From positions 1 through 64,000 of the IMG/VR virus record IMGVR_UViG_3300034104_003795: a DNA stretch of 64,000 bases. The stretch is one strand, 5' to 3'. The position numbers were made by a program, and so were the translations under genes. The notes beneath the pieces are model-generated. The model saw nothing but the letters and a program-made list of their open reading frames with translations, was not told the origin of the DNA and made no database searches. How positions within the stretch are numbered: position 1 is the stretch's first letter; each line of letters begins with the position of its first letter. Below are positions 1,906 through 39,057 of this stretch, one piece after another.

Positions 1906-2625
1906 TTATTTACAGGTTTTCCAGCCACCACCTTTTGATTTGTAGTTTTTTGCAGCCCATCCATTTGCATAAGCCGATGGATATACATCAAACTTCTTTT
2001 TAGCTGCAGCTTTAGATGCTGACCATTTAGCCGGGTCAGTTGGACAATTCTTTTCTAAGAATAATTCCATTTTTTGTTCTACGGTTAATTTCATATTTTC
2101 GTTTTTCTTTTTACCAGCACAATGTGCTTTTTGTGAGAAACCTTTTGGGTTACTACAATTTATTGAGTTCTTATATTTTTGAGACCATTTCTCATCAATC
2201 CCCTCACTAGCTCCTGTCTTTACAAACGTTGGTTTTTGACCTTTTGATTTTTCTCCACCTTTTTTAGCATCCCCTGCTTTAGATTGTGCAGCTCTTTTTC
2301 TTTTTACAAACGAAGCTCTACCATCTTTACCTAATTTATCAGCTTTTGCATTTGATAAACAGGCTGCATAGGCAGAACCTTTTTTAGAATCTCCACATTT
2401 TCCAACCTTCTCACCTTTGGTATTGTATCTATCCCAACCACCAGTTGGTCCACTTCCAAACCATTTACGAAGGTCTTCGCTAATTGGTGTATTATCATGC
2501 CCGCATTTGTGACATAGGTAAGGTTGAGTACCACCATCGGATATATCCCAATGCCAATTACATGAATCACAAGTAACTACATTAGCGTTCACACCTTCAT
2601 TTAATATATTAGTTAGTTTTATCAT
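1906..2625 (-). CDS. modular basic protein: MIKLTNILNE leader, CxxC/CxxC Zn finger, several Lys-rich modules (last is DUF5872-like)
   Basis: CDSC..CHKC; modules start after ISE, IDE, FLE; C-terminal KFDVYPSAYANGWAAKNYKSKGGGW. Confidence 0.6.
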   Translation of the reverse strand: MIKLTNILNEGVNANVVTCDSCNWHWDISDGGTQPYLCHKCGHDNTPISEDLRKWFGSGPTGGWDRYNTKGEKVGKCGDSKKGSAYAACLSNAKADKLGKDGRASFVKRKRAAQSKAGDAKKGGEKSKGQKPTFVKTGASEGIDEKWSQKYKNSINCSNPKGFSQKAHCAGKKKNENMKLTVEQKMELFLEKNCPTDPAKWSASKAAAKKKFDVYPSAYANGWAAKNYKSKGGGWKTCK

Positions 2626-2898
2626 TTATTTATAAAAATTGTTATAAATATGTTGCTTTATTTGAATTGGCATTCTTAATTTTCTATTTTCTAAATAATT
2701 ATCTAATTTTACTCCTTTAACAAAATACTTAAATGTAAAATTTGCATTTGGTTTTGATTTTAGTGTTATATCTACCAACGCATTTCCATTTTTATCCCAC
2801 CCTTTACTTGGATATGATAGTATAGTATCTTTGCTAAATTCTTCAAACGATACTTTTTTATCTTTTACTTCATTTAATATATTAGTTAGTTTTATCAC
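2626..2898 (-). CDS. hypothetical protein, MIKLTNILNE N-terminus, GTG start
   Basis: 30 nt at the 5' end (2868-2897) identical to 2595-2624. Confidence 0.55.
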   Translation of the reverse strand: MIKLTNILNEVKDKKVSFEEFSKDTILSYPSKGWDKNGNALVDITLKSKPNANFTFKYFVKGVKLDNYLENRKLRMPIQIKQHIYNNFYK

Positions 2899-3007: not shown

Positions 3008-3736
3008 TTATTTAGTGAATACACCTTTTTTAATCATTTTATCTAATATATTTGCACAAGCTATATCTAATGCTTTTTTAGTTGAAATACTAATAGTTGA
3101 TTGGTTAAACTTAATCGGGTCTATTGAAGCATCTGAAACTAATGTTAATTGTCTATTTGTTTTAGCCTCACCCAAACCAGATGCTGCGATGATTGAACCA
3201 TTTTCAGCATTTGTGAAACGAACCTGTAAACCTAAACGAGTTACCAAATTATCTTTGATACCATCTTTTAAATTTATTGTTTCATCTTCGGATACTGAAT
3301 AATCATATACTTCAATTTCAACAAAGTAATGTGCTAATTTAATCTTTCCTCTACCTTCAATTTTGTTTTCAGAAATACCAGCATTTGATGCTTTGAATTG
3401 AGCAACCATTCTGTTCTTAATTTCTGTTTTATCTTCGGTGAATTCAAATCTATTAAGGTTATCCAAATATTCCAATACGATATTTGCAACACCCAATCCA
3501 ACTCTCTTTTCTTTTAATTCAGGATACATTTCGTACACTTCTTCACCAATACCACATTTAAGGATTTGAATATACTTCTTTGGACCTTCGTAATCTAAAT
3601 ATGCAGATATATCTTTCTTTTTTTCAAAATCTGCTTTGAATTCTTCTGTTTTAGTACTTCCTATTGTTTGAGCATGTAGGACACCCACACCACTCGTAAT
3701 TAACAATATACCTAATAATACGATTAATTTTTTCAT
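3008..3736 (-). CDS. CsgG/HfaB-like exported protein
   Basis: Signal peptide ..VLHA-Q; GLGVANIVLEYLDNLNRFEFTE, AHYFVEIEV and LGLQVRFTNAENGSIIAASGLGEA follow the CsgG-family pattern. Confidence 0.65.
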   Translation of the reverse strand: MKKLIVLLGILLITSGVGVLHAQTIGSTKTEEFKADFEKKKDISAYLDYEGPKKYIQILKCGIGEEVYEMYPELKEKRVGLGVANIVLEYLDNLNRFEFTEDKTEIKNRMVAQFKASNAGISENKIEGRGKIKLAHYFVEIEVYDYSVSEDETINLKDGIKDNLVTRLGLQVRFTNAENGSIIAASGLGEAKTNRQLTLVSDASIDPIKFNQSTISISTKKALDIACANILDKMIKKGVFTK

Positions 3737-3760
3737 ACATAAATAATTTATTATAAATAT

Positions 3761-3788
3761 AAAAAAAGGGAGAAACGATGTTCTCCCC
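3761..3788 (-). terminator. intrinsic terminator whose U-tract abuts an ATATTTATA motif
   Basis: GGGAGAA-ACGATG-TTCTCCC stem with A7 on +; near-identical copy at 5193-5220. Confidence 0.75.
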
Positions 3789-3792
3789 TAAT

Positions 3793-4269
3793 TTACTTTA
3801 CATTTGGGTCTTCTAGATTTTTGATATATTCATCAATCAATCTACTTACTGCTTCAGGCTTTTCATCAGCCTTAAACTTAACCTTTATTTTAGCCATCCC
3901 TGCTTCACTTGGATTATATCCTGAATCAACTTCAATACCTTTGATATTGTGTTCGTATCCTTTTTTCTTAAATAAACCTAATAAAGATTTTTTAAGACTG
4001 GATACTTCCTTTTCTTCATCACCAAATATAAGTCTACAAGTAAACTCAATATCTAGCTCATCTAATCCAATAGATGAATGGTCCGCTAAAATATAAAGAG
4101 GTACAACCAAATCCTTACCACCTATATTAAAGGAAGTAGTTTTGGGTGTACCATCTTCATTGAAATAGTTTCGGAGAGCATTAATATGCTGTCTTTCACT
4201 TATACCTTGAGAAACCATAGCGGCCTCTAATAGACCGCCAACTAGTTCCTCTACATTTAATCTTGCCAT
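3793..4269 (-). CDS. DUF2589-like protein (partner of the adjacent DUF2589)
   Basis: LVGGLLEAAMVSQ..VPLYILADHSSIGLDELDIEF resembles DUF2589 pair members. Confidence 0.55.
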   Translation of the reverse strand: MARLNVEELVGGLLEAAMVSQGISERQHINALRNYFNEDGTPKTTSFNIGGKDLVVPLYILADHSSIGLDELDIEFTCRLIFGDEEKEVSSLKKSLLGLFKKKGYEHNIKGIEVDSGYNPSEAGMAKIKVKFKADEKPEAVSRLIDEYIKNLEDPNVK

Positions 4270-4293
4270 AATATAACCTTTATTTTTTAATTA

Positions 4294-4890
4294 TTACTTT
4301 GCTTCTTCAGTAAGTGGAATTAAAGATGGTTCTAACATTTGAGTTAGGTAATCTGATAATTTCAACATACCTTCAGTTGCTGGTAATTGTTCAGCATGTA
4401 CTTTTACATTGTATTTAGCTGAGTTGTCAGTACTTCTAGTGTTCTCTTTGTTTGTAGCTACTTTACCAGAAATTTTTGCATTCCAGCTCATACCCCAAAA
4501 TCTACCACCAGCTGATACTTCAACACTGCTTTCAGTTTTTACATCACTTTTTTCTGTCTCTGAAGTTTTTACTTCCATAGCAAATTCAATATCTGCTGAA
4601 GTGATTGCTAATGAAGGAAGTGGTACTAATGGTAACATAGGAACTTTACTATACAATTTTTGTATAGTTTGTTGACCTGTTGCACCATCGGTTACAACTC
4701 TGTTCATTTCAACATCTAAAGAACGTGCTTTAGTTTTTTTAGTTTTCTCGTCCGTTACGAATGCTACTTCAGAAATGTATTTCCAAGTTACTTCGTTTAA
4801 TTTTGCTTGACCTTTTGCCATACCAACAATCGGTGAAACAATCAAATCTTCAATAGGAAGACCTGCGAATTGGTCTGCGATACCTGCCAT
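4294..4890 (-). CDS. DUF2589 family protein
   Basis: QFAGLPIEDLIVSPIVGMAKGQAKL..VPMLPLVPLPSLAITSADIEFAMEV..DNSAKYNVKVHAEQ. Confidence 0.7.
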   Translation of the reverse strand: MAGIADQFAGLPIEDLIVSPIVGMAKGQAKLNEVTWKYISEVAFVTDEKTKKTKARSLDVEMNRVVTDGATGQQTIQKLYSKVPMLPLVPLPSLAITSADIEFAMEVKTSETEKSDVKTESSVEVSAGGRFWGMSWNAKISGKVATNKENTRSTDNSAKYNVKVHAEQLPATEGMLKLSDYLTQMLEPSLIPLTEEAK

Positions 4891-4965
4891 AAATTTAAAT
4901 TTTTATAATTAATTTTTTGTAACTTGTTCCAACATAAATATCCCAAAAAAGATAAAACAACCCAA

Positions 4966-5169
4966 TTATCCAAATTTTACTATTCCTTTGTACTCTTTTT
5001 TGATTTTTTCTATCTCAATAAGTGCTTCTTTATATTTTTCCTTTATTTCATCGTTTACCGTAAAATCCAAAACGGTCTCACAATGTGGACAGGCTGAGAC
5101 TGGGTGTTTGAATATAAATTCTAAAGTTAAACCAATCGGTTTTTTACAAGCTGGACAGGGTAGAGCCAT
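4966..5169 (-). CDS. Zn-ribbon protein
   Basis: CPAC...CPHC. Confidence 0.6.
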   Translation of the reverse strand: MALPCPACKKPIGLTLEFIFKHPVSACPHCETVLDFTVNDEIKEKYKEALIEIEKIKKEYKGIVKFG

Positions 5170-5192
5170 AACATTTTATTTATTATAAATAT

Positions 5193-5220
5193 AAAAAAGG
5201 GAGAAACTATGTTCTCCCTT
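5193..5220 (-). terminator. intrinsic terminator plus ATATTTATA motif
   Basis: GGGAGAA-ACTATG-TTCTCCC. Confidence 0.75.
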
Positions 5221-5257
5221 AAATACTTCCGCCCTTCCTACAGTTAAAGGAAATATA

Positions 5258-5536
5258 TTATCCTAATTCTTCTTCAGTCCCAGCATCCAATTTGTTCTTA
5301 TCGTGTTCCGCTTTTCTATTGATGTACTTATCAACCGAAGCGATACCAAATGCGCCCAATGTGATTACTAAGAATCCGTTGAAAATATATTCGTTGATTA
5401 GTAATTCCTTACCCATATAACCTGTTATCAAGTCTACGAATAATGCAAGTACCATACAACCAAATGATAAGAAACCAACTACTGATTTTTCGTTGATATC
5501 ATTGTTGTCTTTGAATAATTCTTTAAAGAATCCCAT
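5258..5536 (-). CDS. two-TM small membrane protein (holin-like topology)
   Basis: Two hydrophobic segments and a charged C-tail. Confidence 0.5.
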   Translation of the reverse strand: MGFFKELFKDNNDINEKSVVGFLSFGCMVLALFVDLITGYMGKELLINEYIFNGFLVITLGAFGIASVDKYINRKAEHDKNKLDAGTEEELG

Positions 5537-5579
5537 AATTTTACAATTTAATTAATTAATGTAACAATACATAACTAAT

Positions 5580-6239
5580 TTATCCAGCTTGTTCAGCATC
5601 TTCATCTTTAATCTTTCCACACTTCAAACATTCTTCATCGCCATCTCCGTCTAAGTCACCCCAAACGTGCTCACATTGTCTATGTGCAAAATATACATCA
5701 ATCTTACCATCACCATCAAAATCAATACCATCCATTACACCATCACCATCTTCATCTACCTCAATACCGGTTCTTGGTTGAGCTTTAAAAGGGCTTTCAA
5801 TAATGTGAGGATTATTTGGTTCTGATTTTACTTCCACTTTATTTGCTTCGATAAGGTTAATTTCATGTGCGTTTTTTGCAGCTTGTACAAATGCATCTGG
5901 AATCAATGGAGTGTTATTTGGTGGAGTTACAGGCATATCAGCAGTATTGCTTAATGATGTACCATCTTCCTCATCCATCTTTTGTACTAACATCTTATCC
6001 TTATCGGTATCACTAAACCAATAATCTATAATCTTACCATAAGAACCGATGAAAGCTCCTAATAACAATAATAGAAGTTCTTTCCATTCTCCTTCTATTG
6101 CAGATTTGTTAAATATAGCAAAGAACATTCCTGCCATAATAAACATAAATCCACCCAACACCATAGCAGTAATCCACCATCTACGGCTCATCATTTTATT
6201 TAATAGGTCTTTAAACCCACTTGGTTGTTGCTCTGCCAT
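5580..6239 (-). CDS. two-TM membrane protein with C-terminal DxDGDG Ca-binding repeats and Cys/His ligands
   Basis: DEDGDGVMDGIDFDGDGKID, CEHVWGDLDGDGDEECLKC. Confidence 0.6.
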   Translation of the reverse strand: MAEQQPSGFKDLLNKMMSRRWWITAMVLGGFMFIMAGMFFAIFNKSAIEGEWKELLLLLLGAFIGSYGKIIDYWFSDTDKDKMLVQKMDEEDGTSLSNTADMPVTPPNNTPLIPDAFVQAAKNAHEINLIEANKVEVKSEPNNPHIIESPFKAQPRTGIEVDEDGDGVMDGIDFDGDGKIDVYFAHRQCEHVWGDLDGDGDEECLKCGKIKDEDAEQAG

Positions 6240-6262
6240 TTTATATAAATTTTAGTTTTTTA

Positions 6263-6583
6263 TTACCATTCAGCTGGTTTCTCTTTGAATTCATCACCTT
6301 CTTTCTTCTTCTCCTTTGGAGCTGGTGCTGGTTGTGCCGTTCCACCATTTCCACCTTTGTTGATGATTACAGTTTTACCTGCTGCTTGAGATTGTTGGTT
6401 AGAGTTTGTAATGTTAATTACTGGAGCAGCTGCCGGTGCCGGAGTTGCTTCTTTATCATCACCGCCTGTTAATTTTGTTGTGAACCAACCACCCACACCT
6501 AATGTGATAGTTGATACAAGTCCTAATAGTATGTTCTTTATTGAACCACCACCACTTGATTGTTCTTGTTGTTCTTCTGCCAT
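6263..6583 (-). CDS. single-TM protein with low-complexity Pro/Ala/Gln tail
   Basis: ILLGLVSTITLGVGGWF; PAPAAAP. Confidence 0.55.
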   Translation of the reverse strand: MAEEQQEQSSGGGSIKNILLGLVSTITLGVGGWFTTKLTGGDDKEATPAPAAAPVINITNSNQQSQAAGKTVIINKGGNGGTAQPAPAPKEKKKEGDEFKEKPAEW

Positions 6584-6610
6584 TTTGTTTTTATTTTAAT
6601 GTTACAAATT

Positions 6611-6982
6611 TTATAACTTATTGAAATCAGTAATACCAATCATCTTACCATTTGCATCATATAGAGCTATTCTATAAGCTGATGCCGGTAAAGCGGTAGT
6701 ATATACTTTTAATATATTATCTCCAGAATTTGCGTACATTGTTTCTTTAGATACTACTCTATTTGCAATATCTAAAATTTTAACTGTCACATTTCCTGCA
6801 GTTTCTAGCTTTACGTTCATAGCCACTTCCGAAGTGACAAATTGAGATTGTAACTTAATACCAGCGGTTGCTGACATTTTTAATTCTGCGTTTGGATTTA
6901 CAGGTTGAATCATATCAATTGGAGATTTTCTACATCCAACCAAGATGATTACTCCAAATAACACTAATAATACTTTTTTCAT
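6611..6982 (-). CDS. lipoprotein with T9SS-CTD/FlgD-like Ig domain
   Basis: Lipobox ILVGC; GNVTVKILDIANRVV..GDNILKVYTTALPASAYRIALYD. Confidence 0.6.
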   Translation of the reverse strand: MKKVLLVLFGVIILVGCRKSPIDMIQPVNPNAELKMSATAGIKLQSQFVTSEVAMNVKLETAGNVTVKILDIANRVVSKETMYANSGDNILKVYTTALPASAYRIALYDANGKMIGITDFNKL

Positions 6983-6994
6983 TTTAATTCTATT

Positions 6995-7348
6995 TTAATT
7001 TATTATCAGTAACGTTTTACCTATTTGGACACTATTCTCATCTTCCAAAGATAAATATAAATATCTAACAGGTAACGATTTTGTGTATAACTTTAAGGAA
7101 TTTTCCCCAATTTTACCAATTATTCTTTCTCTAGTAACTACTTGCTGACCTACTGAATCAAAAAGAGTAAGTGTATATATTCCTTCCGATTTTAAAGTGA
7201 ACTTAAATTGTTCTCCGTTTCCAATAGATGCTTCTTTAACAGAAAATATATCTTCTACTTTTGGTGGTGGGGTTGGTTCTACTTCTACTTTTCTACAAGA
7301 GATTATAAAAACAACACAACACAATAAGATTAATATTAACTTTTTCAT
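6995..7348 (-). CDS. lipoprotein with T9SS-CTD/FlgD-like Ig domain (paralogue of neighbour)
   Basis: Lipobox IISC; YTLTLFDSVGQQV..GENSLKLYTKSLPVRYLYLSLED. Confidence 0.6.
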   Translation of the reverse strand: MKKLILILLCCVVFIISCRKVEVEPTPPPKVEDIFSVKEASIGNGEQFKFTLKSEGIYTLTLFDSVGQQVVTRERIIGKIGENSLKLYTKSLPVRYLYLSLEDENSVQIGKTLLIIN

Positions 7349-9636
7349 TATTTCATTTTTACTTTTAATGTGTTTCCGCTTTTATTTACTGCATCGGTGA
7401 ATGAAATTGAAATTAAACCTAATACATTGTTCAATTTTGTTTGTGGTTTGAAACTGATTTTATATTCGGTAGTATTATCTAAAACCCCACCATCAGTAAT
7501 TAAAGAACCAAAATTTACATAATCACCTTTATCAGTTCCATAATTAGTTGGTGACCCCTTTGTCTTATAAGATACACTACTAAATTTCAATAAACTATTA
7601 TCGTAATTTAATTTGAATTGAGTTCCAACTAATTCTTGTTGTAATGGGTCAATCTTAATATATGCAGTAACACTATCTCCAATAATTTCAGTTATTATAG
7701 ATGCGTTTATTTGATTTGATATTGGTAAACTCATTGGTATAACACTCATACTTCTAATAGAAGAACCTGATATCGCAGGTGGAGTTTGTTGTGCTGAATG
7801 TGATAAATTTACATCACCTTTCCAAGTTACACTAACATTATATGTGTTATTAAGTGTTCCACTATTCAAATTAAATGGATATAAACTTCTAGTGTAATTG
7901 AATTGTGTATTCCAATTTGATTTTGTAATCGCATCATATTCCGATTTTCCATACAACTTCATCAAATAAGTTAATGTTGAATATTCATTAATAGGTTGTA
8001 CACCTATTAAATGTTGTAATAATTTATAGGTATCGGTTTCATTAAATACACCATTACCATCTACATCTGCGTTCATAAATTGAATACCAGATGTAAACTC
8101 TAATCCACTTTCGTTTCCAAATATTCCACTATTTGATAATTCTTTAAATGCCAAATACACATCGGATACACTTACTACACTACTATATAAATTATTTAGT
8201 TCGGTTTGATTAGTATATGATAAATCAATTCCATGTTGCTTAAACATCACATTAGGTGTAAATGTAAACTCTGCACTCAACCCCCAAAAAAATCCAGCTC
8301 TTCTTATATTAGATGAAAATGATGAACCTGCAAAATTAAGTTCCGTTGGTGTATAAATCCAATATGCGGCCCAAGTTCCATCATCCCATTGATAAGTTAC
8401 AGCCCCATTCCACAAATCAAATAATTGTAAACTTGTAACACTACTTGCTGAAGTACCTTGTGGGAATTCTCTTTTATCAATTAGGATTTGATATCTTTGG
8501 GATTGTGATTCATAATCATATACTACGCACCATTCTACTTGTCCGCCTGATGTTGTTGCTCTAACACCATTACCATTTACCTTTACAGTATCTAAATCAT
8601 TTGTTAAATCAACTTTACCTAATCCACTTATAGCTCTTGATGTGTTAGTTGTTGTTCCCCACACATTGTTTACAAAAGTATTTGCTTTTGCTGTAAATTT
8701 AGTTTCATCTACATTACTTCCAAAATCAAAATTAAATCTTGCTGTTAATACTTCCCCATTTGAATGTGTTACTGAATTTGTATAGAATTCTGTAAATGTT
8801 GCATCATCAGGGTTAGTCCAAGTTCCGTATTCAATTACATAAGGGCAACTAAATCCATTCGGTAAATCATTCCATTGAGAACCGTTCCATTTTGTTACCG
8901 CATAATCTTCGTTACCACTATTGTTTGGTTCACCAGGTGCCCAGTTATTATATTGACCTTGTATGTTTCCGGCTGTTTGTCCGTTTGATGTTTTTATTAG
9001 AGTTCCAGCTTCAGGACCGGCATCAATTCTCCATTGTCCCTCAACAGCTTCATCCGTTAATGCAAACCAAATGTTTGTTTGTGGAACATTGTTAAACACA
9101 AACGCATCTTCATCTGCGGAAGTGATTGTTACCAAATATCCTTGTTGCCCTTTAAATGTGGTATTTAACGCTGCCGCCCTTGCACCCGTATAACTTGTTC
9201 CTGTTGATATTGGTCTATAAAAATGACCATTTGTTCCATTGTAAAAGAACCCCGTTGGATTAACCGTAGCTGCTACCGATAATGCAATATTACCTCTTAC
9301 TGAACCTGTGTTTACTTTTAAAGATGCTAATGCCGTATTGATATTAGCCATTGTTCCCGTTACCACTAAACGAGTCTTATTACCTGCTAATGTAAATCCA
9401 CTAGCTGCAGTTAGACCTGTTGTTGTGGTTAAGTTAAATGTAGTACCTGTTGGTGGATTAACTAAACTGATTGAAGCTAATAGAGTTGCGGTTGAACCAA
9501 ATCCACTCAATACAAACCCACTCGCATCTTGTCCGTTTGTGGATGGTAAAAAAGATTTAGAGTCCGGTGCAGATACACTCTGACCGAACCCTAAATTTGT
9601 AATTAATAAAAATAAAAATATTAATAAGTTTCTCAT
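7348..9636 (-). CDS. exported multidomain protein: C-type lectin, dockerin-like repeat, C-terminal cohesin-like domain
   Basis: Signal peptide; GYLVTITSADEDAF..WFALTD..YNNWAPGEPNNSGNEDYAVTKWNGSQWNDLP (CTL); ADVDGNGVFNETDTYKLLQHLIG; WKGDVNLSH; LVGTQFKLNYDNSLLKF. Confidence 0.7.
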   Translation of the reverse strand: MRNLLIFLFLLITNLGFGQSVSAPDSKSFLPSTNGQDASGFVLSGFGSTATLLASISLVNPPTGTTFNLTTTTGLTAASGFTLAGNKTRLVVTGTMANINTALASLKVNTGSVRGNIALSVAATVNPTGFFYNGTNGHFYRPISTGTSYTGARAAALNTTFKGQQGYLVTITSADEDAFVFNNVPQTNIWFALTDEAVEGQWRIDAGPEAGTLIKTSNGQTAGNIQGQYNNWAPGEPNNSGNEDYAVTKWNGSQWNDLPNGFSCPYVIEYGTWTNPDDATFTEFYTNSVTHSNGEVLTARFNFDFGSNVDETKFTAKANTFVNNVWGTTTNTSRAISGLGKVDLTNDLDTVKVNGNGVRATTSGGQVEWCVVYDYESQSQRYQILIDKREFPQGTSASSVTSLQLFDLWNGAVTYQWDDGTWAAYWIYTPTELNFAGSSFSSNIRRAGFFWGLSAEFTFTPNVMFKQHGIDLSYTNQTELNNLYSSVVSVSDVYLAFKELSNSGIFGNESGLEFTSGIQFMNADVDGNGVFNETDTYKLLQHLIGVQPINEYSTLTYLMKLYGKSEYDAITKSNWNTQFNYTRSLYPFNLNSGTLNNTYNVSVTWKGDVNLSHSAQQTPPAISGSSIRSMSVIPMSLPISNQINASIITEIIGDSVTAYIKIDPLQQELVGTQFKLNYDNSLLKFSSVSYKTKGSPTNYGTDKGDYVNFGSLITDGGVLDNTTEYKISFKPQTKLNNVLGLISISFTDAVNKSGNTLKVKMK

Positions 9637-11318
9637 TAGTCTACTACAAGTTCTATCTTCTTACCAGTCGCATCAACAGCATCTGCTAGTACAAAGAAGA
9701 ATAAACCGGCAGTATTGCTTAATGGAACTTTTGGTGTGAAGATTAATTTATATGGAATACCAGTTTTGATTCTAGAAACTTTTATTTGGTCAATAGAACC
9801 AAATGTCAATCTACCATTATCATGCGTTGAGAAATTGGTGATTGTAGAACCAGCATCAAATATTACATTATCTAATGTTAATTTTGTTGAATCATAATTC
9901 ATAATAACCTGTAAACCCGCTAAACCTTCTTTGGTTAATCTAGTACTTAAAACAACTTTACCACCTTCTAATGTAGATACTACACTTAAAGATGCTTGTT
10001 CTAATTTAGCACTTTCATATGAATTTGATTGATATGAAGTCATTGCCATTGTTGACATACTCTTTATAGTAGCAACATCCGATGTACCAGGATTAGCTGC
10101 ATTTGTAAAGATACCACTTGCTATTCTTGCAGCTACAGTATCAGGATGAGATGAATGTGACCAATCCAAATCACCACCCCATGCAAATACAGCATCCACA
10201 GTTTGTGCAGGTTGTGTAACATATACTCTATATTTTGAAGTACCATCTAACCAACTCTGATTTAACAATCCACTATTCCATCTCCAAGAAGTTGCAGTTG
10301 ATGTTGGTATAAATGCGTTAGCCGATACGTCTTGTCCCATTACATAAGCAAATGCGTAATAAGAATCTGCTTCGGTGAAGGTCATATCATTTTTAGTAAT
10401 ATTACCAATTTTCTTTTCTAAATTTGGTCTTGTGAAATAATTTGCAACACCACTAATATCAGTTTGTGAAACACCTAAGAATGATTTGTATGCATCTGAT
10501 ACAGTTATAACATTGTTCATCCAAGTCTTTTGTGATGCAGGTGATACAAATACACCTAATGAATCACCAACTTTAATACCAGAAGTAAATAAGGCTTCAC
10601 CACTACCATCTAATGCTCTTTGTGCAATAGGTTGTTGTGACCAATCTATATCACCAGTACCATCGGTTTTTAATTTCATTAATTGAATGTTATGGTCAGC
10701 AATATTATATCCAGATGGAAATAATACTCTTACTTTAAAGAAAGAAGTATTACCAGTCACTCCGGTAATTGATAAAGGACCGGATGTTGTTTTTACATAT
10801 GGAATATTTGCACCAGTAGCACTATCTAAAGCATATGATAAATCCAATTTATGAAAGTTTTGATAAGTGTTTTGGTCTTTAATGATATACTTTTGTGTTG
10901 CTATCACACCATTTACCGATTGGTCTGCTCTTTGAACTGCTAATTGTCCAACATTCCAATCTGCATTTACAGCATATCCCCAAGGTGTAGTGGTATATTG
11001 ACCATATAAAGATGTATCACTCACATTTGCATTTGAGGTGAACTTATAGTTAGTCCAACCGGTATAATAAGTTTGTGATTGACTACCTTGTGAGAAAGCA
11101 GTAGATACATAAGTTAAAGCCTTATTATTAAATTGATATCTTAACCAAAAATAACGTGGTTTAGTTACACCTTTATCTACACTATATGTTACGGTTACAG
11201 TATCACCAACTTTATAAGGTCCTGCTGAAATAGATTGGTTTACAACTATTTGCGCTTCTGTCTTAAATGTTAATAGGGATATCACCAATACCCCTAAAAA
11301 TGTTAATAGTTTTTTCAT
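9636..11318 (-). CDS. exported protein with degenerate dockerin-like and C-terminal cohesin-like domains
   Basis: Signal peptide ..TEA-Q; ITVSDAYKSFL; WGGDLDWSHS; GLAGLQVIMNYDSTKLTLDNV. Confidence 0.6.
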   Translation of the reverse strand: MKKLLTFLGVLVISLLTFKTEAQIVVNQSISAGPYKVGDTVTVTYSVDKGVTKPRYFWLRYQFNNKALTYVSTAFSQGSQSQTYYTGWTNYKFTSNANVSDTSLYGQYTTTPWGYAVNADWNVGQLAVQRADQSVNGVIATQKYIIKDQNTYQNFHKLDLSYALDSATGANIPYVKTTSGPLSITGVTGNTSFFKVRVLFPSGYNIADHNIQLMKLKTDGTGDIDWSQQPIAQRALDGSGEALFTSGIKVGDSLGVFVSPASQKTWMNNVITVSDAYKSFLGVSQTDISGVANYFTRPNLEKKIGNITKNDMTFTEADSYYAFAYVMGQDVSANAFIPTSTATSWRWNSGLLNQSWLDGTSKYRVYVTQPAQTVDAVFAWGGDLDWSHSSHPDTVAARIASGIFTNAANPGTSDVATIKSMSTMAMTSYQSNSYESAKLEQASLSVVSTLEGGKVVLSTRLTKEGLAGLQVIMNYDSTKLTLDNVIFDAGSTITNFSTHDNGRLTFGSIDQIKVSRIKTGIPYKLIFTPKVPLSNTAGLFFFVLADAVDATGKKIELVVD

Positions 11319-11319
11319 C

Positions 11320-11976
11320 TTACTTTGCGTTTTTACCGAATAGTTTTTTAATCAAACTATCCGATGCTTTTTTAAGGGCGTTGCTTAAGGATGTTTGATT
11401 GAATTTACCACCCTGGTCAACGATTAACGTAGACATTGATATTTCAGATGAACTTTCTTCCACCACCACTTCTTTCTCTTTCTTTCCATCTTTATAAAGA
11501 ATACCCTGTAGTCTTACAACCACTTCTTCTTCTCCTTTATGAAAAACTGAAATATTTGTTTTTGTAGATAACACATCCAAATAAACAATATTTACTTTTA
11601 ATTTGTATGGTGCATCCGGAGCTAAATCATATCCTTTTTCCTGAAGATATTCTTCTAATATATTTTTTACCCCAAATGCCAAATTACGATTTCCGGCTAA
11701 TTTACCAATCTTAACCTGGTTTTCAACACCTTCAACCCAAACGTGGTCTGATTCTTCATACCAAATATTTTCTGGATTATTTTTGAATGTACCGTCAATT
11801 CTATGAGTAATTTCATTAGAGAGTTCGGTAGCCCATTGTTCTCTACCACTAATTTGTAGAAATACAAAGAACAATTGGAATACGAGTGCAAATCCTATAA
11901 AAAGACCAACACCCAGTAAAAACATTTTGAACAATAACTCTTTAAAGTTCAAAACAGTTGATTTAATGTATTGCAT
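11320..11976 (-). CDS. membrane-anchored CsgG/TolB-N-like protein
   Basis: N-terminal TM; GNRNLAFGVKNILEEYLQEKGY and FNQTSLSNALKKA parallel the 3008 protein. Confidence 0.45.
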   Translation of the reverse strand: MQYIKSTVLNFKELLFKMFLLGVGLFIGFALVFQLFFVFLQISGREQWATELSNEITHRIDGTFKNNPENIWYEESDHVWVEGVENQVKIGKLAGNRNLAFGVKNILEEYLQEKGYDLAPDAPYKLKVNIVYLDVLSTKTNISVFHKGEEEVVVRLQGILYKDGKKEKEVVVEESSSEISMSTLIVDQGGKFNQTSLSNALKKASDSLIKKLFGKNAK

Positions 11977-12072: not shown

Positions 12073-12108
12073 AAAAAGAGTATCCAAACATAAATATTGG
12101 ATACTCTT
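12073..12108 (-). terminator. terminator, perfect 12-bp stem; loop carries ATATTTATG
   Basis: AAGAGTATCCAA-acataaata-TTGGATACTCTT. Confidence 0.75.
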
Positions 12109-25237: not shown

Positions 25238-25265
25238 AAGGATAAATATATCCCTATCAAATTCT

Positions 25266-26414: not shown

Positions 26415-26434
26415 ACTAATAAATATTAACTAAA

Positions 26435-31700: not shown

Positions 31701-32009
31701 AGATTAGATTTGAATTTCACACAAGATGTTTATATCAAAGTTAAAGATACAAAACATACTTTAAGATTCACAGCCGATATCTATAACTTCACAAACTTCA
31801 TCAGCAAAGATTGGGGTGTAAACCAAACTCCAACAACTGTAACTCCACTTAACTTCGTAAGATTGGATACTGATGGAAAAACTCCGGTATTCTCATTCCC
31901 TTATTTAGATGGAAGAAACAAAGTTCCGTTTACTGATTCATTCAGAGATAACGTAGGATTTAGTTCTCGCTACCAAATTCAATTGGGTGTAAGATATATC
32001 TTTAACTAA
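28749..32009 (+). CDS. TonB-dependent receptor with N-terminal carboxypeptidase-regulatory-like domain (Oar-like)
   Basis: Signal peptide; GRYNLPNLKIGGPYSI; LDGANFNNSFGL; ISLDAIEQIQVNVSPFDV..GGSINTVTRSG; C-terminal IQLGVRYIFN. Confidence 0.92.
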   Translation: MKKIGKFLLMVVITLLSFGASAQETTSEIQGLVSDGKAGLAGVTIVATHQPTGTKYSTSSRTDGRYNLPNLKIGGPYSIHVTSIGFKAEHQDDITLLLGQSHKANFILKEASTTLKEVVVTSGQSKVFNSSRNGSQEIINRQLIERIPNVNRSWKDLVKLVPSQNNLSFGGLSSQLNNVTLDGANFNNSFGLGDGTLGGQTGAQPISLDAIEQIQVNVSPFDVKFGGFAGGSINTVTRSGKNQSFGSVYQFFKNKDLQGYKVGDVTLPKQDFTYDLKGFTAGGAIVKNKLFFFVNGEQESRMEPGTQWVASDANNTPNGINVSQAKAADLDALRKFLIEKYNYDPGAYQGYQYGSVSKRLTTKLDWNINSKNSFSLKYTLLRSSADIPASNSQSVNASNGRRPSTTSMPFYGGGYTINNNADIIIGELNTRFSNNASNKLQIGYTKLRDFRGTLTSGNFPQVDILDGNGQPFTTFGYERFTYGNVLNSDVIQLNNIFNLYKGKHEFTFGTQNSFKKYSNGFSPNYAGAFRFNSLADFYASAEGTKPAAAYDLSWSLTGDFPLVGPKNTELSLFAQDKFRVKDNLTITYGLRADYVSFADNFLYNPVVDTLSKFYDGVRLNTGLAPKNALQLSPRIGFNWDVNNDQTLQVRGGTGLFQGPPPFVWISNQASNSGMALFGSITNATGYMFNPDINAYRPTPTPGLSRAYSLNVTDPNYKFPQVWKSTLAVDKKVLGWTVTAEGTYIKNINATVFQNVALPSTGNITLSDGRTRFIKRSVYDATGTAQTSANPNIGNAIYMTNANVGYVLFGTLQVQRQFKNLAVNASYTRQTAKDGTINGSTAFTMWGARPTSTNPNNFEEGFSNNYLPHRIIGSFVYGKEFIKNTRTSIGLLYEASPNSPQSSLSYTYAGDLNNDGFNGNDLIFVPKDASQIKLTNASAVGGVADTRTQEELWNQLDAFISNNKYLSTRRGQFAERQALVLPWVHRLDLNFTQDVYIKVKDTKHTLRFTADIYNFTNFISKDWGVNQTPTTVTPLNFVRLDTDGKTPVFSFPYLDGRNKVPFTDSFRDNVGFSSRYQIQLGVRYIFN

Positions 32010-34521: not shown

Positions 34522-34545
34522 ACATATAAATATAATGGAAACTAA

Positions 34546-37342: not shown

Positions 37343-37343
37343 T

Positions 37344-37649: not shown

Positions 37650-37651
37650 AA

Positions 37652-38122: not shown

Positions 38123-38123
38123 A

Positions 38124-39056: not shown

Positions 39057-39057
39057 G

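What the first reader, a model, noticed from the sequence alone, without database searches (positions are those of the whole stretch)
3008..11976. Phage-encoded envelope/export module: CsgG-like pair bracketing DUF2589 pair, lipoproteins and cohesin-dockerin-lectin proteins
Seen: 12 co-oriented genes, most with Sec/lipoprotein signals or TMs, in a phage context. A CsgG-like protein sits at each end; between them are two DUF2589 proteins, three small membrane proteins, a Zn ribbon, two Ig-fold lipoproteins and two large exported scaffold proteins. ATATTTAT motifs precede sub-units (3752, 4933, 5184, 12089). Established: CsgG forms the outer-membrane curli secretion pore, and cohesin-dockerin pairs assemble surface complexes. 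Inference: a virus-built surface apparatus on the infected cell (adhesion, aggregation, superinfection shielding) or a membrane-assisted assembly/egress system. I know no described phage system with this make-up.
Basis: partly seen in the sequence, partly recalled or inferred. Interest (0 to 1): 0.85.

Follow-up and report, generated by a model that had tools for sequence, protein, structure and literature searches.

The report
Phage-built envelope module with CsgG-like protein
A large virus of freshwater Flavobacterium-type bacteria carries a conserved set of exported proteins (a relative of the curli pore CsgG, sugar-binding and snap-together scaffold proteins, small membrane proteins) that most likely re-dresses the surface of the infected cell. 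The two DUF2589 genes inside the block are a separate inserted cassette.

Summary
The 12 co-oriented genes are real and lie in a 274-kb IMG/VR phage contig. The block is composite.

(1) Nine genes form a conserved envelope module: g12-g11-g10-g9-g8-g7-g6-g5 and g1. The module is colinear in 41 of 47 related viral loci. Reduced or shuffled versions occur in the cultured Flavobacterium phage vB_FspM_immuto (gp013-gp019) and in two marine phage contigs.

(2) g4-g3-g2 (Zn ribbon plus two DUF2589 proteins, no export signals) is a separate 1.43-kb cassette. It is flanked by a 46-nt terminator/promoter-like direct repeat. It sits next to g1 only in the window's closest relatives and elsewhere in other genomes.

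g1 is a true but divergent CsgG/HfaB-family protein by profile (E 6e-5 to E. coli CsgG) and by fold (Foldseek prob 1.0). It lacks the lipid-anchor cysteine. g12 has only the related small LptE/YajG/LpoB-type fold. g10 carries an EPN/WND C-type lectin, and g10 and g11 carry dockerin-like and cohesin-like modules. In relatives the cohesin protein ends in a type IX secretion (T9SS) sorting domain.

Best reading: a phage-made cell-surface display or secretion module. Its role (receptor masking, superinfection exclusion or adhesion) is inferred. No description of it was found in the literature searched.

The parts
3008..3736 (-). g1 (242 aa): Sec signal peptide (cleavage ..HA|Q), divergent CsgG/HfaB-family protein, no lipobox Cys. 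It is the slowest-evolving gene of the module.
   Evidence: The family profile A3 hits E. coli CsgG (PDB 3x2r/4q79) at E 6e-5. The AF2 model has pLDDT 80.8 and pTM 0.71. Foldseek's top hits are CsgG 4uv3/4uv2/6l7c (E 1e-7, prob 1.0), followed by PelC, FlgT and LptE. The profile also pulls in proteins with Pfam CsgG domains, and ESM Atlas neighbours are CsgG/LpoB clusters. Median identity to relatives is 89%, against 50-67% for its neighbours.
3746..3791 (-). Copy 1 of a 46-nt direct repeat: terminator hairpin GGGAGAAC..GTTTCTCCC, a T-run, then ATATTTATAATAAAT. It lies between g2 and g1.
   Evidence: The element occurs exactly twice in the window, with 0 expected by chance.
3793..4269 (-). g2 (158 aa): DUF2589 protein with no export signal. 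Part of the inserted cassette.
   Evidence: Pfam PF11655 at E 6.5e-13. No hydrophobic segment. Co-occurs with g3 and g4 in 48 of 48 loci.
4294..4890 (-). g3 (198 aa): DUF2589 protein with no export signal. Part of the inserted cassette.
   Evidence: Pfam PF11655 at E 2.6e-30. It is 25% identical to g2. The AF2 model is poor (pLDDT 63) and has no structural match.
4966..5169 (-). g4 (67 aa): small protein with two CxxC pairs, a likely Zn ribbon. Part of the inserted cassette.
   Evidence: The sequence shows CPAC...CPHC. Zn-ribbon Pfam hits are all below threshold. It always accompanies g2 and g3, upstream in 31 loci and downstream in 17.
5178..5222 (-). Copy 2 of the 46-nt terminator/promoter-like direct repeat, between g5 and g4.
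   Evidence: A relative without the cassette (L099) has a single analogous element between g5 and g1.
5258..5536 (-). g5 (92 aa): small protein with two predicted TM segments.
   Evidence: Hydrophobic 19-mers at residues 19-37 and 50-68. Present in 26 of 47 module loci.
5580..6239 (-). g6 (219 aa): membrane protein with an invariant second hydrophobic helix and juxtamembrane stretch, acidic DxDxDG repeats and a C-terminal Cys/His cluster.
   Evidence: Residues 52-93 are invariant in 47 and in 26 homologues. Its N-terminal 100 aa are 69% identical to a marine homologue whose g1 is only 37% identical. Present in 44 of 47 loci. No Pfam or PDB match.
6263..6583 (-). g7 (106 aa): small protein with an N-terminal Gly-rich hydrophobic stretch and a Pro/Ala-rich tail ending in W. 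In relatives it lies directly upstream of the CsgG-like gene.
   Evidence: Homologues are immuto gp016 and L188_107 (E 2.6e-15), each immediately before the g1 homologue.
6611..6982 (-). g8 (123 aa): lipoprotein (LVGC) made of one C-terminal beta-sandwich domain of the DUF3244 / T9SS-CTD / FlgD-Ig kind.
   Evidence: In the g8/g9 family, 18 of 43 members hit DUF3244 and 11 of 43 hit Por_Secre_tail, all below threshold.
6995..7348 (-). g9 (117 aa): lipoprotein (IISC), a paralogue of g8.
   Evidence: 31% identity to g8, E 6e-14. Lipobox found.
7348..9636 (-). g10 (762 aa): Sec-exported (..GFG|Q). It has a C-type lectin domain with EPN and WND motifs, a dockerin-like Ca loop (NADVDGNGVFNETD) and a C-terminal cohesin-like domain.
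   Evidence: Lectin_C at 29.1 bits, above the 22.6 cut-off. Cohesin (E 4e-4) and dockerin (E 0.03) hits are below threshold. EPN and WND are kept in 19 of 23 homologues, and the Ca loop is kept in the 21 homologues aligned at that site. The lectin part is 35% identical to immuto gp013.
9636..11318 (-). g11 (560 aa): Sec-exported (..EA|Q). It has a degenerate dockerin-like segment and a C-terminal cohesin-like domain shared with g10.
   Evidence: The C-terminal region matches g10 at E 3e-11. The homologue L121_703 matches both g11 and the bona fide cohesin of immuto gp015 (E 1.6e-11).
11320..11976 (-). g12 (218 aa): N-terminal signal anchor followed by a small domain of about 145 aa of the LptE/YajG(Lipoprotein_16)/LpoB kind. 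This is the same fold group as CsgG, but CsgG membership is not shown.
   Evidence: Pfam Lipoprotein_16 at E 6e-5, below threshold. ESM Atlas structural neighbours are Lipoprotein_16, LptE and CsgG/LpoB clusters (TM 0.52-0.63). Homologues are immuto gp019 (30% identity) and L188_146. Present in 46 of 47 loci.
12073..12108 (-). Hairpin (AAGAGTATCCAA..TTGGATACTCTT) plus T-run downstream of g13 and upstream of g12. An ATATTTAT copy lies in its loop. It is the likely upstream boundary of the module's transcription unit.
   Evidence: Read directly from the sequence. Motif position.

Best explanation
The block holds two separate things.

(A) A conserved phage envelope module: g12, g11, g10, g9, g8, g7, g6, g5 and g1. 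After infection of a Flavobacterium-type (Bacteroidota) host, these proteins are exported through the host Sec pathway. The lipoproteins g8 and g9 would go through the lipoprotein pathway.
- g5, g6 and g7 stay in the inner membrane.
- g12 (LptE/LpoB-like) and g1 (CsgG-like) work in the periplasm or at the outer membrane. g1 most likely forms a ring, as its relatives CsgG, PelC and FlgT do.
- g10 and g11 are the variable payload. g10 carries a Ca-dependent mannose-type (EPN) lectin. Both carry dockerin-like and cohesin-like modules that can snap together into a scaffold.
- In related phages the cohesin protein carries a T9SS sorting signal, so the scaffold is placed on the cell surface.
- Net effect: the infected cell is coated with a phage-made lectin scaffold. 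This would mask or bind surface glycans (superinfection exclusion, or protection of progeny from re-adsorption), or make the cell stick to neighbours or particles.

(B) g4-g3-g2 (Zn ribbon plus a DUF2589 pair) is an independent cytoplasmic three-gene cassette. It recombined into the terminator/promoter-like element between g5 and g1 in this lineage only.

What is shown: gene content, export signals, homologies, folds, co-conservation and the separateness of the cassette. What is inferred: ring formation, channel function, cohesin-dockerin pairing, surface location in this phage and the biological role.
For: Module and cassette are separable.
- Of 47 g1-centred viral loci with at least 9 kb upstream, g12 is present in 46, g10 in 44, g6 in 44, g11 in 40 and g8/g9 in 35. 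Forty-one are colinear. g2-g4 occur in only 9.
- g2, g3 and g4 co-occur in 48 of 48 loci, in two gene orders and several contexts.
- A 46-nt repeat flanks the cassette, and a cassette-free relative has one such element.

Deep co-conservation.
- Cultured Flavobacterium phage immuto has lectin-dockerin (gp013), gp014, cohesin with T9SS CTD (gp015; Cohesin 5.9e-9, Por_Secre_tail 2.4e-8), a g7 homologue (gp016), a g1 homologue (gp017, 56% identity), gp018 and a g12 homologue (gp019) side by side.
- Marine contigs L186 and L188 again combine g1, g7, g6 and g12 homologues with a lectin protein and a cohesin protein carrying a T9SS CTD (TIGR04183 at 1.7e-8).

g1 is of the CsgG family. The family's most conserved motif (YPEL..KRVG) aligns with CsgG's constriction loop (YPASNF). 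The model has a long beta-hairpin (137-155 / 159-176) at the position of CsgG's first transmembrane hairpin.

Export and host.
- Signal peptides and lipoboxes are shown.
- The residue after the predicted cleavage site is Q in g1, g10 and g11, and is nearly invariant in g1 homologues. This matches the Bacteroidetes Q-rule (PMC5837995).
- The cultured relative infects Flavobacterium.

Rate pattern: g1 and the g6 core are near-invariant, while g8-g12 are 50-67% identical. That fits conserved machinery plus a variable, host-facing payload.

Lectin and dockerin motifs are conserved.

Context: Flavobacterium phage resistance commonly maps to gliding-motility and T9SS surface genes (bioRxiv 10.1101/2020.10.02.323337; PMC9804748). 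A role at that surface is therefore plausible.
Against: - There are no expression, localisation or phenotype data for any member.
- In the window's own proteins the cohesin, dockerin and T9SS-CTD-like hits are all below curated thresholds. Support for them is transitive, through relatives.
- g1 lacks the lipid-anchor cysteine that CsgG and g1's bacterial homologues have.
- The hairpin at the TM1 position is rich in charged residues. The second hairpin is not modelled confidently. g1 may therefore be a periplasmic ring or scaffold and not a pore.
- The closest non-viral relatives include CsgG-like domains fused to inner-membrane kinases and caspases. Those fusions cannot be outer-membrane pores.
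- No multimer prediction was possible.
- The gp018-like protein that follows g1 in 77 related loci is missing here, so this version may be incomplete.
- The DUF2589 cassette could still cooperate with the module in this lineage.
Confidence: 0.5

Rival explanations
1. g1 is not a channel but a periplasmic ring or scaffold, as PelC, LpoB or pre-pore CsgG are. Together with g12 and the invariant membrane protein g6, the module targets a host envelope machine (peptidoglycan synthesis, Lpt/Bam, or the T9SS/gliding apparatus) and blocks or rewires it. The lipoproteins g8 and g9 consist of little more than a T9SS-CTD-like domain. In this reading they would act as decoy substrates that jam T9SS.
For: - g1 has no lipobox and its hairpins are polar.
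- Foldseek also finds PelC, FlgT, LptE and GNA1162.
- Relatives of the CsgG-like domain are fused to inner-membrane kinases.
- The g6 core is 69% identical across lineages whose g1 is 37% identical. That suggests a conserved host partner.
- g8 and g9 hit Por_Secre_tail and DUF3244.
- T9SS and gliding genes govern phage sensitivity in Flavobacterium (10.1101/2020.10.02.323337; PMC9804748).
Against: - The CTD-like hits of g8 and g9 are all below threshold, and the profile comparison with a real CTD is weak (prob 6.7%).
- This reading does not explain the conserved lectin, cohesin and dockerin payload, or why relatives use a working T9SS signal on their cohesin protein.
- No host partner has been identified.
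Confidence: 0.25
2. The block is a lysis or egress cassette. g5 and g6 would be holin-like membrane proteins. g7 with the lipoproteins g8 and g9 would act as a spanin-like pair. g1 would disrupt the outer membrane. The DUF2589 pair would help a cell-wall hydrolase.
For: - The block has small proteins with 1-2 TM segments and small lipoproteins in tandem.
- Bacterial DUF2589 pairs sit next to peptidoglycan hydrolase or binding genes in all three bacterial contexts examined: GH108+PG_binding_3 in Luteibacter and Xanthomonas, and PG_binding_1 and CHAP in Geotalea.
Against: - There is no endolysin in or next to the block.
- No holin or spanin family hit appears in Pfam or PHROGs.
- The periplasmic part of g7 is Pro/Ala/Gly-rich, not a coiled coil.
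- The module lies among DNA-metabolism genes, both here (ThyA, UvdE, PhoH, helicase) and in immuto (RNR, nucleases). The endolysin annotated in immuto is about 8 kb away.
- Large lectin and cohesin proteins have no place in known lysis systems.
- The DUF2589 cassette is not linked to the module in most genomes.
Confidence: 0.12
3. The block is host chromosome captured by misassembly, or a recent host-derived island with no phage function.
For: - All component families are typical of bacteria.
- PHROGs has no family for any of the 12 proteins above noise.
- The window also holds a SusC/TonB-dependent-receptor-like gene.
Against: - GC content (0.31-0.35), strand and skew match the flanking phage genes.
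- 507 IMG/VR stretches encode g1 relatives, many on contigs of 150-334 kb.
- The module is colinear in 41 of 47 loci.
- It is present in a cultured, completely sequenced phage and in two marine phage contigs next to RecA, exonuclease and DnaB.
- ESM Atlas clusters of g1 and g12 are 100% viral.
Confidence: 0.02

Closest known systems
CsgG, the curli secretion channel of E. coli (PDB 4uv3, 4q79, 3x2r; Pfam PF03783)
   Same: - The g1 family profile matches CsgG at E 6e-5 over CsgG residues 1-191.
- The AF2 model's best PDB matches are CsgG chains (prob 1.0, TM 0.45-0.5).
- A conserved Y-P loop lies at the position of CsgG's constriction loop.
- A long beta-hairpin lies where CsgG's first transmembrane hairpin is.
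- g1 is Sec-exported.
   Different: - Identity to CsgG is about 10-12%, and g1 itself has no direct Pfam hit.
- g1 has no lipobox cysteine.
- The constriction residues N55 and F56 are not conserved.
- The hairpins are shorter and polar.
- No CsgA, CsgB, CsgE or CsgF partner is present.
- The gene is phage-encoded. Pore formation is untested.
HfaB with HfaA/HfaD, the holdfast anchor of Caulobacter (own knowledge, not tested here)
   Same: A CsgG/HfaB-family outer-membrane protein is coupled to exported surface proteins that hold a polysaccharide at the cell surface. Here a CsgG-like protein is co-conserved with exported sugar-binding (lectin) scaffold proteins.
   Different: No HfaA or HfaD homologues were found. 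The payload here is C-type lectin, cohesin and dockerin. The host phylum differs, and the system is viral.
Cohesin-dockerin assemblies (cellulosomes and non-cellulosomal cohesin/dockerin proteins) and T9SS-sorted surface proteins of Bacteroidota
   Same: - g10 and g11 have a dockerin-type Ca loop and a cohesin-like C-terminal domain.
- Relatives have Pfam-level cohesin fused to a type A T9SS sorting domain.
   Different: - No enzymes are attached, and the only recognisable functional head is a lectin.
- Both module types occur on the same protein.
- The hits in the window's own proteins are below threshold.
- None of the window's proteins has a T9SS CTD above threshold.
LptE, YajG (Lipoprotein_16), LpoB, PelC and GNA1162: small outer-membrane-associated plug, ring or activator lipoproteins
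   Same: The domain of g12 has these as structural neighbours, with a sub-threshold Lipoprotein_16 hit. They are also secondary Foldseek hits of g1.
   Different: g12 has a signal anchor (its homologues have an ordinary signal peptide) instead of a lipobox. No LptD, PBP or Pel partner is present.
Flavobacterium phage vB_FspM_immuto gp013-gp019 (NC_055915)
   Same: This is the nearest cultured relative of the module. It has g1 (56% identity), g7, g12 and lectin homologues, plus cohesin proteins in one cluster.
   Different: - The genome is 160 kb, not about 270 kb.
- It has no g5, g6, g8 or g9 homologues in the cluster.
- Its cohesin protein has a real T9SS CTD.
- It has a gp018 protein (Ser/Thr-rich, beta-rich C-terminus) that the window lacks.
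- In the record gp013 and gp015 are annotated as lectin C-type and cohesin domain-containing proteins, and gp014 and gp016-gp019 as hypothetical. The papers found that mention the phage deal with other topics.
Phage envelope proteins that protect the infected cell (T5 Llp, T4 Imm/Sp, plasmid TraT; own knowledge) and Q-rule exported proteins of Porphyromonas gingivalis phages (PMC10367356)
   Same: These are phage-encoded, Sec-exported proteins that act at the host envelope. The P. gingivalis phage study likewise inferred outer-membrane modification from Q-rule signal peptides.
   Different: Those are single small proteins. This is a nine-gene module with a CsgG-like protein and a modular scaffold. 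There is no sequence similarity to them, apart from a noise-level TraT hit of g12 (E 0.048).

Membership tests
CsgG/HfaB family (PF03783), for g1 | Significant sequence similarity to the family | tested here: met
   g1 alone gets no Pfam hit. The g1 family profile finds proteins that carry Pfam CsgG domains (P0259, P0261, P0263, P0264 and P0141). The widened profile A3 hits E. coli CsgG in the PDB at E 6e-5.
CsgG/HfaB family, for g1 | CsgG fold | tested here: met
   AF2 model with pLDDT 80.8. Foldseek's top 16 PDB hits are CsgG chains (E about 1e-7, prob 1.0, TM 0.45-0.5). The top BFVD hit is a phage protein named CsgG.
CsgG/HfaB family, for g1 | N-terminal lipobox cysteine (outer-membrane lipoprotein) | tested here: not met
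   There is no Cys in the signal peptide of g1 or of its 12 close homologues. The predicted cleavage is A|Q. More distant bacterial and marine homologues do have a lipobox.
CsgG/HfaB family, for g1 | Two transmembrane beta-hairpins per subunit that build a 36-stranded barrel in a nonamer | not testable with these tools
   A long hairpin (137-155 / 159-176) lies at the TM1 position. The TM2 position has one long strand (182-197) followed by a low-confidence stretch. The residues there are fairly polar. No multimer prediction was available.
CsgG/HfaB family, for g1 | Constriction loop (Y51, N55, F56 in mature CsgG) and the curli partners CsgA/B/E/F | tested here: not met
   Y71-P72 align with Y51-P52, and the loop motif YPEL..KRVG is the most conserved in the family. 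N55 and F56 have no equivalents. No curli partner domain occurs in the block.
CsgG/HfaB family, for g12 | Significant sequence or profile similarity to CsgG or to g1 | tested here: not met
   No CsgG hit. The g1 and g12 profiles compare at hhalign prob 3.2%. Only short collinear motifs are shared. Structural neighbours are Lipoprotein_16, LptE and LpoB/CsgG clusters at TM 0.52-0.63, based on a neighbour's model and not on a model of g12 itself.
DUF2589 (PF11655), for g2 and g3 | Pfam score above the gathering threshold | tested here: met
   49.7 and 106.2 bits against a cut-off of 23. Bacterial members also occur as pairs.
C-type lectin domain (PF00059), for g10 | Pfam score above threshold, plus the Ca/sugar-binding motifs EPN and WND | tested here: met
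   29.1 bits against a cut-off of 22.6. GEPNN and WNDL are present in g10 and conserved in 19 of 23 homologues. Sugar binding itself was not tested.
Cohesin (PF00963), for the C-terminal domain of g10 and g11 | Pfam score above threshold or significant similarity to a bona fide cohesin | tested here: inconclusive
   g10 scores 21.0 bits against a cut-off of 24.1, and g11 has no hit. There is a transitive link: g11 and g10 match L121_703 (E 1.6e-8 and 6.8e-11), and L121_703 matches immuto gp015 cohesin (E 1.6e-11), which passes Pfam. The direct profile comparison is weak (prob 5%).
Dockerin (PF00404), for g10 and g11 | Paired EF-hand-like Ca loops, each followed by a helix | tested here: inconclusive
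   g10 scores 15 bits against a cut-off of 22.9. One canonical 12-residue loop (DVDGNGVFNETD) plus helix is conserved in the 21 homologues aligned at that site. The first segment has no canonical Ca loop, and the g11 loop is degenerate.
T9SS type A C-terminal sorting domain (TIGR04183 / PF18962), for g8 and g9 | C-terminal domain scoring above the curated threshold | tested here: inconclusive
   g8 scores 17.9 bits against a cut-off of 23. Eleven of 43 family members hit PF18962 and 18 of 43 hit DUF3244, all below threshold. The hhalign comparison with the gp015 CTD is in register but weak. Cohesin proteins of relatives pass the threshold.
Holin / spanin lysis proteins, for g5-g9 | Family hit, an adjacent endolysin, and a coiled-coil i-spanin paired with a small Pro-rich lipoprotein | tested here: not met
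   No Pfam or PHROGs hit. There is no endolysin in the block. g7 has no coiled-coil-like sequence, and g8 and g9 are folded beta-sandwich domains.

The most novel reading that the evidence does not exclude
The most novel reading not excluded is that this family of Flavobacterium phages builds its own trans-envelope export and display machine.
- The invariant inner-membrane proteins g6 and g7, the periplasmic g12, and a non-lipidated CsgG-like ring (g1) in the outer membrane form a phage-encoded channel.
- The channel passes unfolded, Ca-dependent dockerin and lectin proteins (g10, g11) to the surface.
- There they lock onto cohesin modules, which are T9SS-anchored in relatives.
- The result is a lectin coat on the infected cell that masks glycan receptors or glues host cells together.

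If true, this would be the first virus-encoded outer-membrane secretion channel and the first viral cohesin-dockerin surface scaffold.
Probability: 0.2. Interest if true: 0.85.

Novelty: new variant of a known kind. Interest (0 to 1): 0.62.

Why it matters
Phages are known to place single small proteins in the host envelope. A conserved nine-gene module with a CsgG-family protein, a lectin and cohesin/dockerin scaffolds is a much larger investment. No description of such a module was found in the literature searched.

The module is widespread. More than 500 viral contigs from lakes and seas encode the CsgG-like protein. A reduced version sits in a cultured phage-host pair, vB_FspM_immuto on Flavobacterium sp. 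LMO8, so its role can be tested directly.

It bears on three questions:
- how large phages of Bacteroidota remodel the host surface;
- whether viruses can supply their own outer-membrane export route or exploit type IX secretion;
- how infected particle-associated flavobacteria behave in nature.

The analysis also separates out the DUF2589 pair as a mobile cassette. It gives this uncharacterised family its first contextual lead: in the three bacterial contexts examined, the paired genes lie next to peptidoglycan hydrolase or peptidoglycan-binding genes.

Tried and rejected
- **Cultured-phage searches.** Megablast of 25 kb against GenBank phages found nothing. tblastn of the DUF2589 protein g3 and of g12 against cultured phages found nothing.
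- **Phage and defence libraries.** PHROGs gave no meaningful family for any of the 12 proteins. PADLOC gave only one weak, likely chance hit (g4 to LmuB, E 0.004), so there is no sign of a defence or anti-defence system.
- **Sequence searches of the PDB.** Profiles of g1 close relatives (A1), g12 (A2), DUF2589 (A6), g11 (A7) and g6 (A9) found nothing. Only the widened g1 profile A3 worked.
- **g1 against g12.** The profile-profile comparison was not significant. I therefore rejected the idea of a pair of CsgG paralogues as unproven.
- **DUF2589 structure.** The AF2 model was poor (pLDDT 63), and its Foldseek matches are meaningless.
- **First large protein search with g3.** It listed only close relatives and added no diversity.
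- **Stop-codon recoding.** I suspected recoding because 38-55 kb has few long ORFs. I rejected it: the stretch is packed with intact ORFs of about 100 aa, there are no tRNAs, and all 12 genes are intact under table 11.
- **Lysis cassette.** Considered and judged unlikely (see rival explanations).
- **g8/g9 as true T9SS substrates.** Left inconclusive.
- **gp018-like protein.** No named family was found for it.
- **Bacterial neighbours of distant g1 homologues.** Uninformative.
- **Literature.** Searches for DUF2589, phage CsgG, phage cohesin/dockerin and phage immuto found no description of the module.

Full report
**1. What is in the sequence**

Window 3008-11976 holds twelve intact, tightly packed ORFs on the minus strand. 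I call them g1 (3008-3736) to g12 (11320-11976). GC content (0.31-0.35) and strand skew are the same as in the flanking DNA. No stop codon had to be read through. A suspected recoded stretch at 38-55 kb is simply packed with ORFs of about 100 aa.

A hydropathy and lipobox scan, together with reading of the N-termini, gives the following:
- Sec-type signal peptides in g1, g10 and g11.
- Lipoboxes in g8 (LVGC) and g9 (IISC).
- Two hydrophobic helices in g5, and one strong helix plus one weaker helix in g6.
- A signal anchor in g12.
- A Gly-rich hydrophobic stretch in g7.
- No such features in g2, g3 or g4.

In g1, g10 and g11 the residue after the predicted cleavage site is glutamine. In g1 homologues this Q is nearly invariant while the preceding signal peptide varies. 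This is the Bacteroidetes Q-rule (PMC5837995).

**2. Phage context and host**

The window is the first 64 kb of IMG/VR contig 3300034104_003795 (274 kb). 507 viral stretches encode a g1 relative and 134 encode a g3 relative. Many lie on contigs of 150-334 kb.

Neighbouring genes are typical of large phages. They include thymidylate synthase, a helicase, PhoH, UvdE, a DNA ligase and a DUF5856 (Dps-like) protein.

Among cultured phages only Flavobacterium phage vB_FspM_immuto (160 kb, host Flavobacterium sp. LMO8) has g1 and g10 homologues. The helicase is closest to those of Bacteroidota phages. Misassembled host DNA is therefore excluded, and the host is very probably a member of Flavobacteriia or Bacteroidota.

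**3. The block is two things**

I ran tblastn of all genes against 160 related loci and counted the hits. Among 47 g1-centred loci with at least 9 kb of upstream sequence:

| Gene | Loci with a homologue (of 47) |
|---|---|
| g12 | 46 |
| g10 | 44 |
| g6 | 44 |
| g11 | 40 |
| g8 / g9 | 35 |
| g7 | 33 |
| g5 | 26 |
| g2-g4 | 9 |

- Forty-one of the 47 loci are colinear and co-oriented.
- The nine loci with g2-g4 are the window's closest relatives.
- In the other loci g1 follows the small membrane-protein genes with no DUF2589 cassette in between. In L099 it directly follows g5.
- g2, g3 and g4 co-occur in 48 of 48 g3-centred loci. g4 lies upstream in 31 and downstream in 17.
- In some genomes the cassette lies 16-18 kb from g1. 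In L038 what looks like the 3' end of a tRNA gene lies just downstream.

In the window the cassette is flanked by a 46-nt direct repeat at 3746-3791 and 5178-5222. Each copy is a terminator hairpin, a T-run and ATATTTATAATAAAT. The element occurs exactly twice in 64 kb, with none expected by chance. The cassette-free relative L099 has one analogous element between g5 and g1. The simplest reading is that a self-contained transcription unit (g4-g3-g2) recombined into the g5/g1 intergenic terminator/promoter-like element.

**4. The CsgG claim**

g1 alone has no Pfam, PHROGs or NCBIfam hit. Four lines of evidence nevertheless place it in the CsgG/HfaB family.
- ESM Atlas neighbours beyond its own viral clusters are CsgG/HfaB/LpoB clusters (score 0.94, structural TM about 0.55).
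- An exhaustive profile search found 312 representatives. These include proteins whose matching region is a Pfam CsgG domain. Some are fused to Ser/Thr kinases, and others in the family are fused to caspase domains. There are also stand-alone lipoproteins such as P0141.
- A 39-sequence profile hits E. coli CsgG in the PDB at E 6e-5 over CsgG residues 1-191.
- The AF2 model (pLDDT 80.8, pTM 0.71) has CsgG chains as its best PDB matches (E about 1e-7, prob 1.0, TM 0.45-0.5). PelC, FlgT, GNA1162 and LptE follow. Its best viral match is a protein annotated CsgG from an uncultured phage.

In the profile alignment the family's most conserved motif (YPEL..KRVG) lies on CsgG's constriction loop (YPASNF). 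The long hairpin 137-176 lies on CsgG's first transmembrane hairpin.

Several features argue against a simple CsgG copy:
- g1 has no lipobox cysteine, whereas its bacterial and marine homologues have one.
- N55 and F56 of CsgG have no equivalents.
- The hairpins are polar, and the second one is poorly modelled.
- There are no curli partner genes.

g12 is a different matter. It has a sub-threshold Lipoprotein_16 (YajG) hit. Its structural neighbours are of the LptE, Lipoprotein_16 and LpoB/CsgG kind. Its profile does not match g1's. It belongs to the same broad fold group but is not shown to be CsgG.

**5. The payload proteins**

g10 has a C-type lectin domain above Pfam threshold. Its EPN and WND motifs are conserved in 19 of 23 homologues. 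Its dockerin-type Ca loop (NADVDGNGxFNExD) is conserved in the 21 homologues aligned at that site, and g11 has a degenerate version.

g10 and g11 share a C-terminal domain (E 3e-11). This domain scores just below the Pfam cohesin threshold. It is linked through the homologue L121_703 to the bona fide cohesin of immuto gp015.

g8 and g9 are paralogous lipoproteins. Each consists of one beta-sandwich of the DUF3244 / T9SS-CTD / FlgD-Ig kind. All of their hits are below threshold.

**6. Deep co-conservation**

In phage immuto the following genes lie side by side among ribonucleotide reductase, nuclease and helicase genes:
- gp013: signal peptide, EPN lectin and a dockerin-like tail.
- gp014: signal peptide plus cohesin-like and dockerin-like sequence.
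- gp015: Cohesin at 5.9e-9 plus the T9SS sorting domain Por_Secre_tail at 2.4e-8.
- gp016: g7 homologue.
- gp017: g1 homologue, 56% identical.
- gp018: signal peptide, a Ser/Thr/Gly-rich region and a beta-rich C-terminus.
- gp019: g12 homologue, 30% identical.

Two marine metagenomic contigs show the same association. Their g1 homologues are only 37% and 47% identical to g1.
- L186 has RecA, an exonuclease and DnaB. These are followed by a 646-aa cohesin protein with a T9SS CTD (TIGR04183 at 1.7e-8), a g6 homologue, a nuclease, a small protein with g7-like architecture but no detectable similarity to g7, and a lipoprotein g1 homologue.
- L188 has a g7 homologue, a lipoprotein g1 homologue, a gp018-like protein, a gp013-like lectin and a g12-like protein.

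A compact version also exists in L121. It has a g12-like gene, one 703-aa cohesin/dockerin protein, one lipoprotein, g7, g6, g1 and a gp018-like gene. The gp018-like gene is present in 77 of the 160 loci but is absent from the window.

Rates differ sharply within the module. g1 has a median identity of 89%. The g6 core (residues 52-93) is invariant, and the N-terminal 100 aa of g6 are 69% identical even in L186. g8-g12 are 50-67% identical.

**7. Interpretation**

Shown:
- A conserved, phage-borne set of Sec-exported and membrane proteins.
- It is built around a CsgG-family protein, two small membrane proteins (g6, g7) and an LptE/LpoB-like protein.
- It is always accompanied by lectin and cohesin/dockerin-type exported proteins.
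- In several lineages the cohesin protein is addressed to the cell surface by a type IX secretion signal.

Inferred:
- g1 forms a ring at or in the outer membrane. All its structural relatives (CsgG, PelC, FlgT) are ring formers (own knowledge of those structures).
- The scaffold proteins assemble by cohesin-dockerin contacts.
- The lectin binds a mannose-type glycan.
- The assembly coats the infected cell.

The most likely uses are masking of glycan receptors or adhesion. Masking would give superinfection exclusion or protect progeny from debris. This fits the fact that surface, gliding and T9SS genes control phage sensitivity in Flavobacterium (bioRxiv 10.1101/2020.10.02.323337; PMC9804748). 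Exported Q-rule proteins of P. gingivalis phages have been read the same way (PMC10367356).

The location among DNA-metabolism genes suggests that the module is not part of the late structural or lysis set, but timing is unknown. The main rival is that g1 is not a pore and that the module binds and rewires a host envelope machine such as T9SS. A lysis role is less likely, and a host-DNA artefact is excluded.

**8. The DUF2589 cassette**

g2 and g3 are clear DUF2589 members, 25% identical to each other, with no export signals. No structure, defence-system or literature lead was found.

Bacterial members also come in pairs. In all three contexts examined they sit beside cell-wall genes:
- Luteibacter and Xanthomonas: a GH108+PG_binding_3 muramidase, two DUF2589 genes and then several unknown genes.
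- Geotalea: DUF2589, three unknown genes, DUF2589, a PG_binding_1 gene, further genes, and a PG_binding_1+CHAP gene.

This hints at a cell-wall-related role. It is a lead, not a result.

**9. The ATATTTAT motif**

The motif, however, is window-wide. There are 18 copies on the coding strand against 1 on the other strand. Fourteen lie in the 21% of non-coding DNA, and 12 lie within 80 nt upstream of an ORF start. Several sit exactly 12 nt before the ATG.

It is probably a general promoter-like or start-site element of this phage. The related octamer TATAAATA is not over-represented overall.

**10. Verdict**

The DUF2589 pair should be removed from the system, and the second "CsgG" should be downgraded.

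What remains is a widespread phage envelope module for which I found no description in the literature searched. It is made of known parts in a new, viral combination, and a cultured phage-host pair is available for testing.

Noticed in passing
window 28749-32009 (+ strand): This 1086-aa ORF is a SusC/TonB-dependent-receptor-like outer-membrane protein (CarboxypepD_reg + Plug + OMP beta-barrel, E 1.7e-40). It lies on the opposite strand, in a stretch with near-zero GC skew. It is conserved at 50-100% identity in 16 IMG/VR contigs and at 31% in one more. It is a second sign that this phage invests in host envelope proteins.
   Followed up: partly
whole window, e.g. 34526-34533, 26419-26426, 25242-25249 (minus strand): ATATTTAT is strongly strand-biased (18 copies against 1) and concentrated in intergenic DNA. 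It often lies exactly 12 nt before an ATG. This suggests a phage promoter or start-site element that would give very short leaders.
   Followed up: partly
L186:5499-5813 compared with window 5580-6239: The N-terminal 100 aa of g6 are 69% identical between the window and a marine contig whose CsgG-like protein is only 37% identical. Residues 52-93 are invariant in all homologues. This is unusually strong constraint for a small phage membrane protein and is unexplained.
   Followed up: partly
L121:10720-12093, L099:11707-13194, L161:12660-14084 (immuto gp018), L188:1210-2529: A protein of 440-495 aa with a signal peptide, a long Ser/Thr-rich low-complexity region and a beta-rich C-terminus follows the CsgG-like gene in L121, L099, immuto and L188. 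Homologues occur in 77 of the 160 related loci. It is absent from the window, where about 8 kb present in the close relatives L003 and L004 seems to be missing. No family was found for it.
   Followed up: partly
L121:9645-9875: This 76-aa ORF just upstream of g1 in the compact module resembles the N-terminal signal-anchor part of the window's g12 (53% identity over 45 aa). It ends in YEGPKK, a motif also found in g1. It may be a recombination scar between g12-like and g1 genes.
   Followed up: no
L182/L183 (Xanthomonas), L184/L185 (Geotalea), L162 (Luteibacter): Bacterial DUF2589 genes occur as pairs inside co-oriented operons of about 8-10 mostly unknown genes. The operons include GH108+PG_binding_3, PG_binding_1 or CHAP cell-wall enzymes, and in Xanthomonadales a LuxR-type response regulator. 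This looks like an uncharacterised cell-wall-associated system.
   Followed up: partly
window 37000-55000 (minus strand): A long tandem array of about 45 small ORFs (70-125 aa), packed head to tail with almost no spacers. Whether they are paralogues was not checked.
   Followed up: no
window 1906-2898 (minus strand); repeats 2595-2627 and 2868-2900: The two ORFs downstream of g1 (239 aa and 90 aa) begin with nearly the same N-terminus (MIKLTNILNEG / VIKLTNILNEV). They share a 33-nt direct repeat spanning their start regions, which suggests a local duplication.
   Followed up: no
window 57881-58855 (minus strand): A phage-encoded SPFH/Band 7 (stomatin/prohibitin-like) membrane-scaffold protein (E 2.8e-20). 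It is another membrane-directed gene in this phage.
   Followed up: no
P0189, P0213, P0220, P0259, P0264 (from the search): The g1-type CsgG-like domain is fused in bacteria to caspase (Peptidase_C14) domains and to Ser/Thr protein kinases. This shows that this branch of the CsgG superfamily is also used as a periplasmic module in proteins that are unlikely to be pores.
   Followed up: partly
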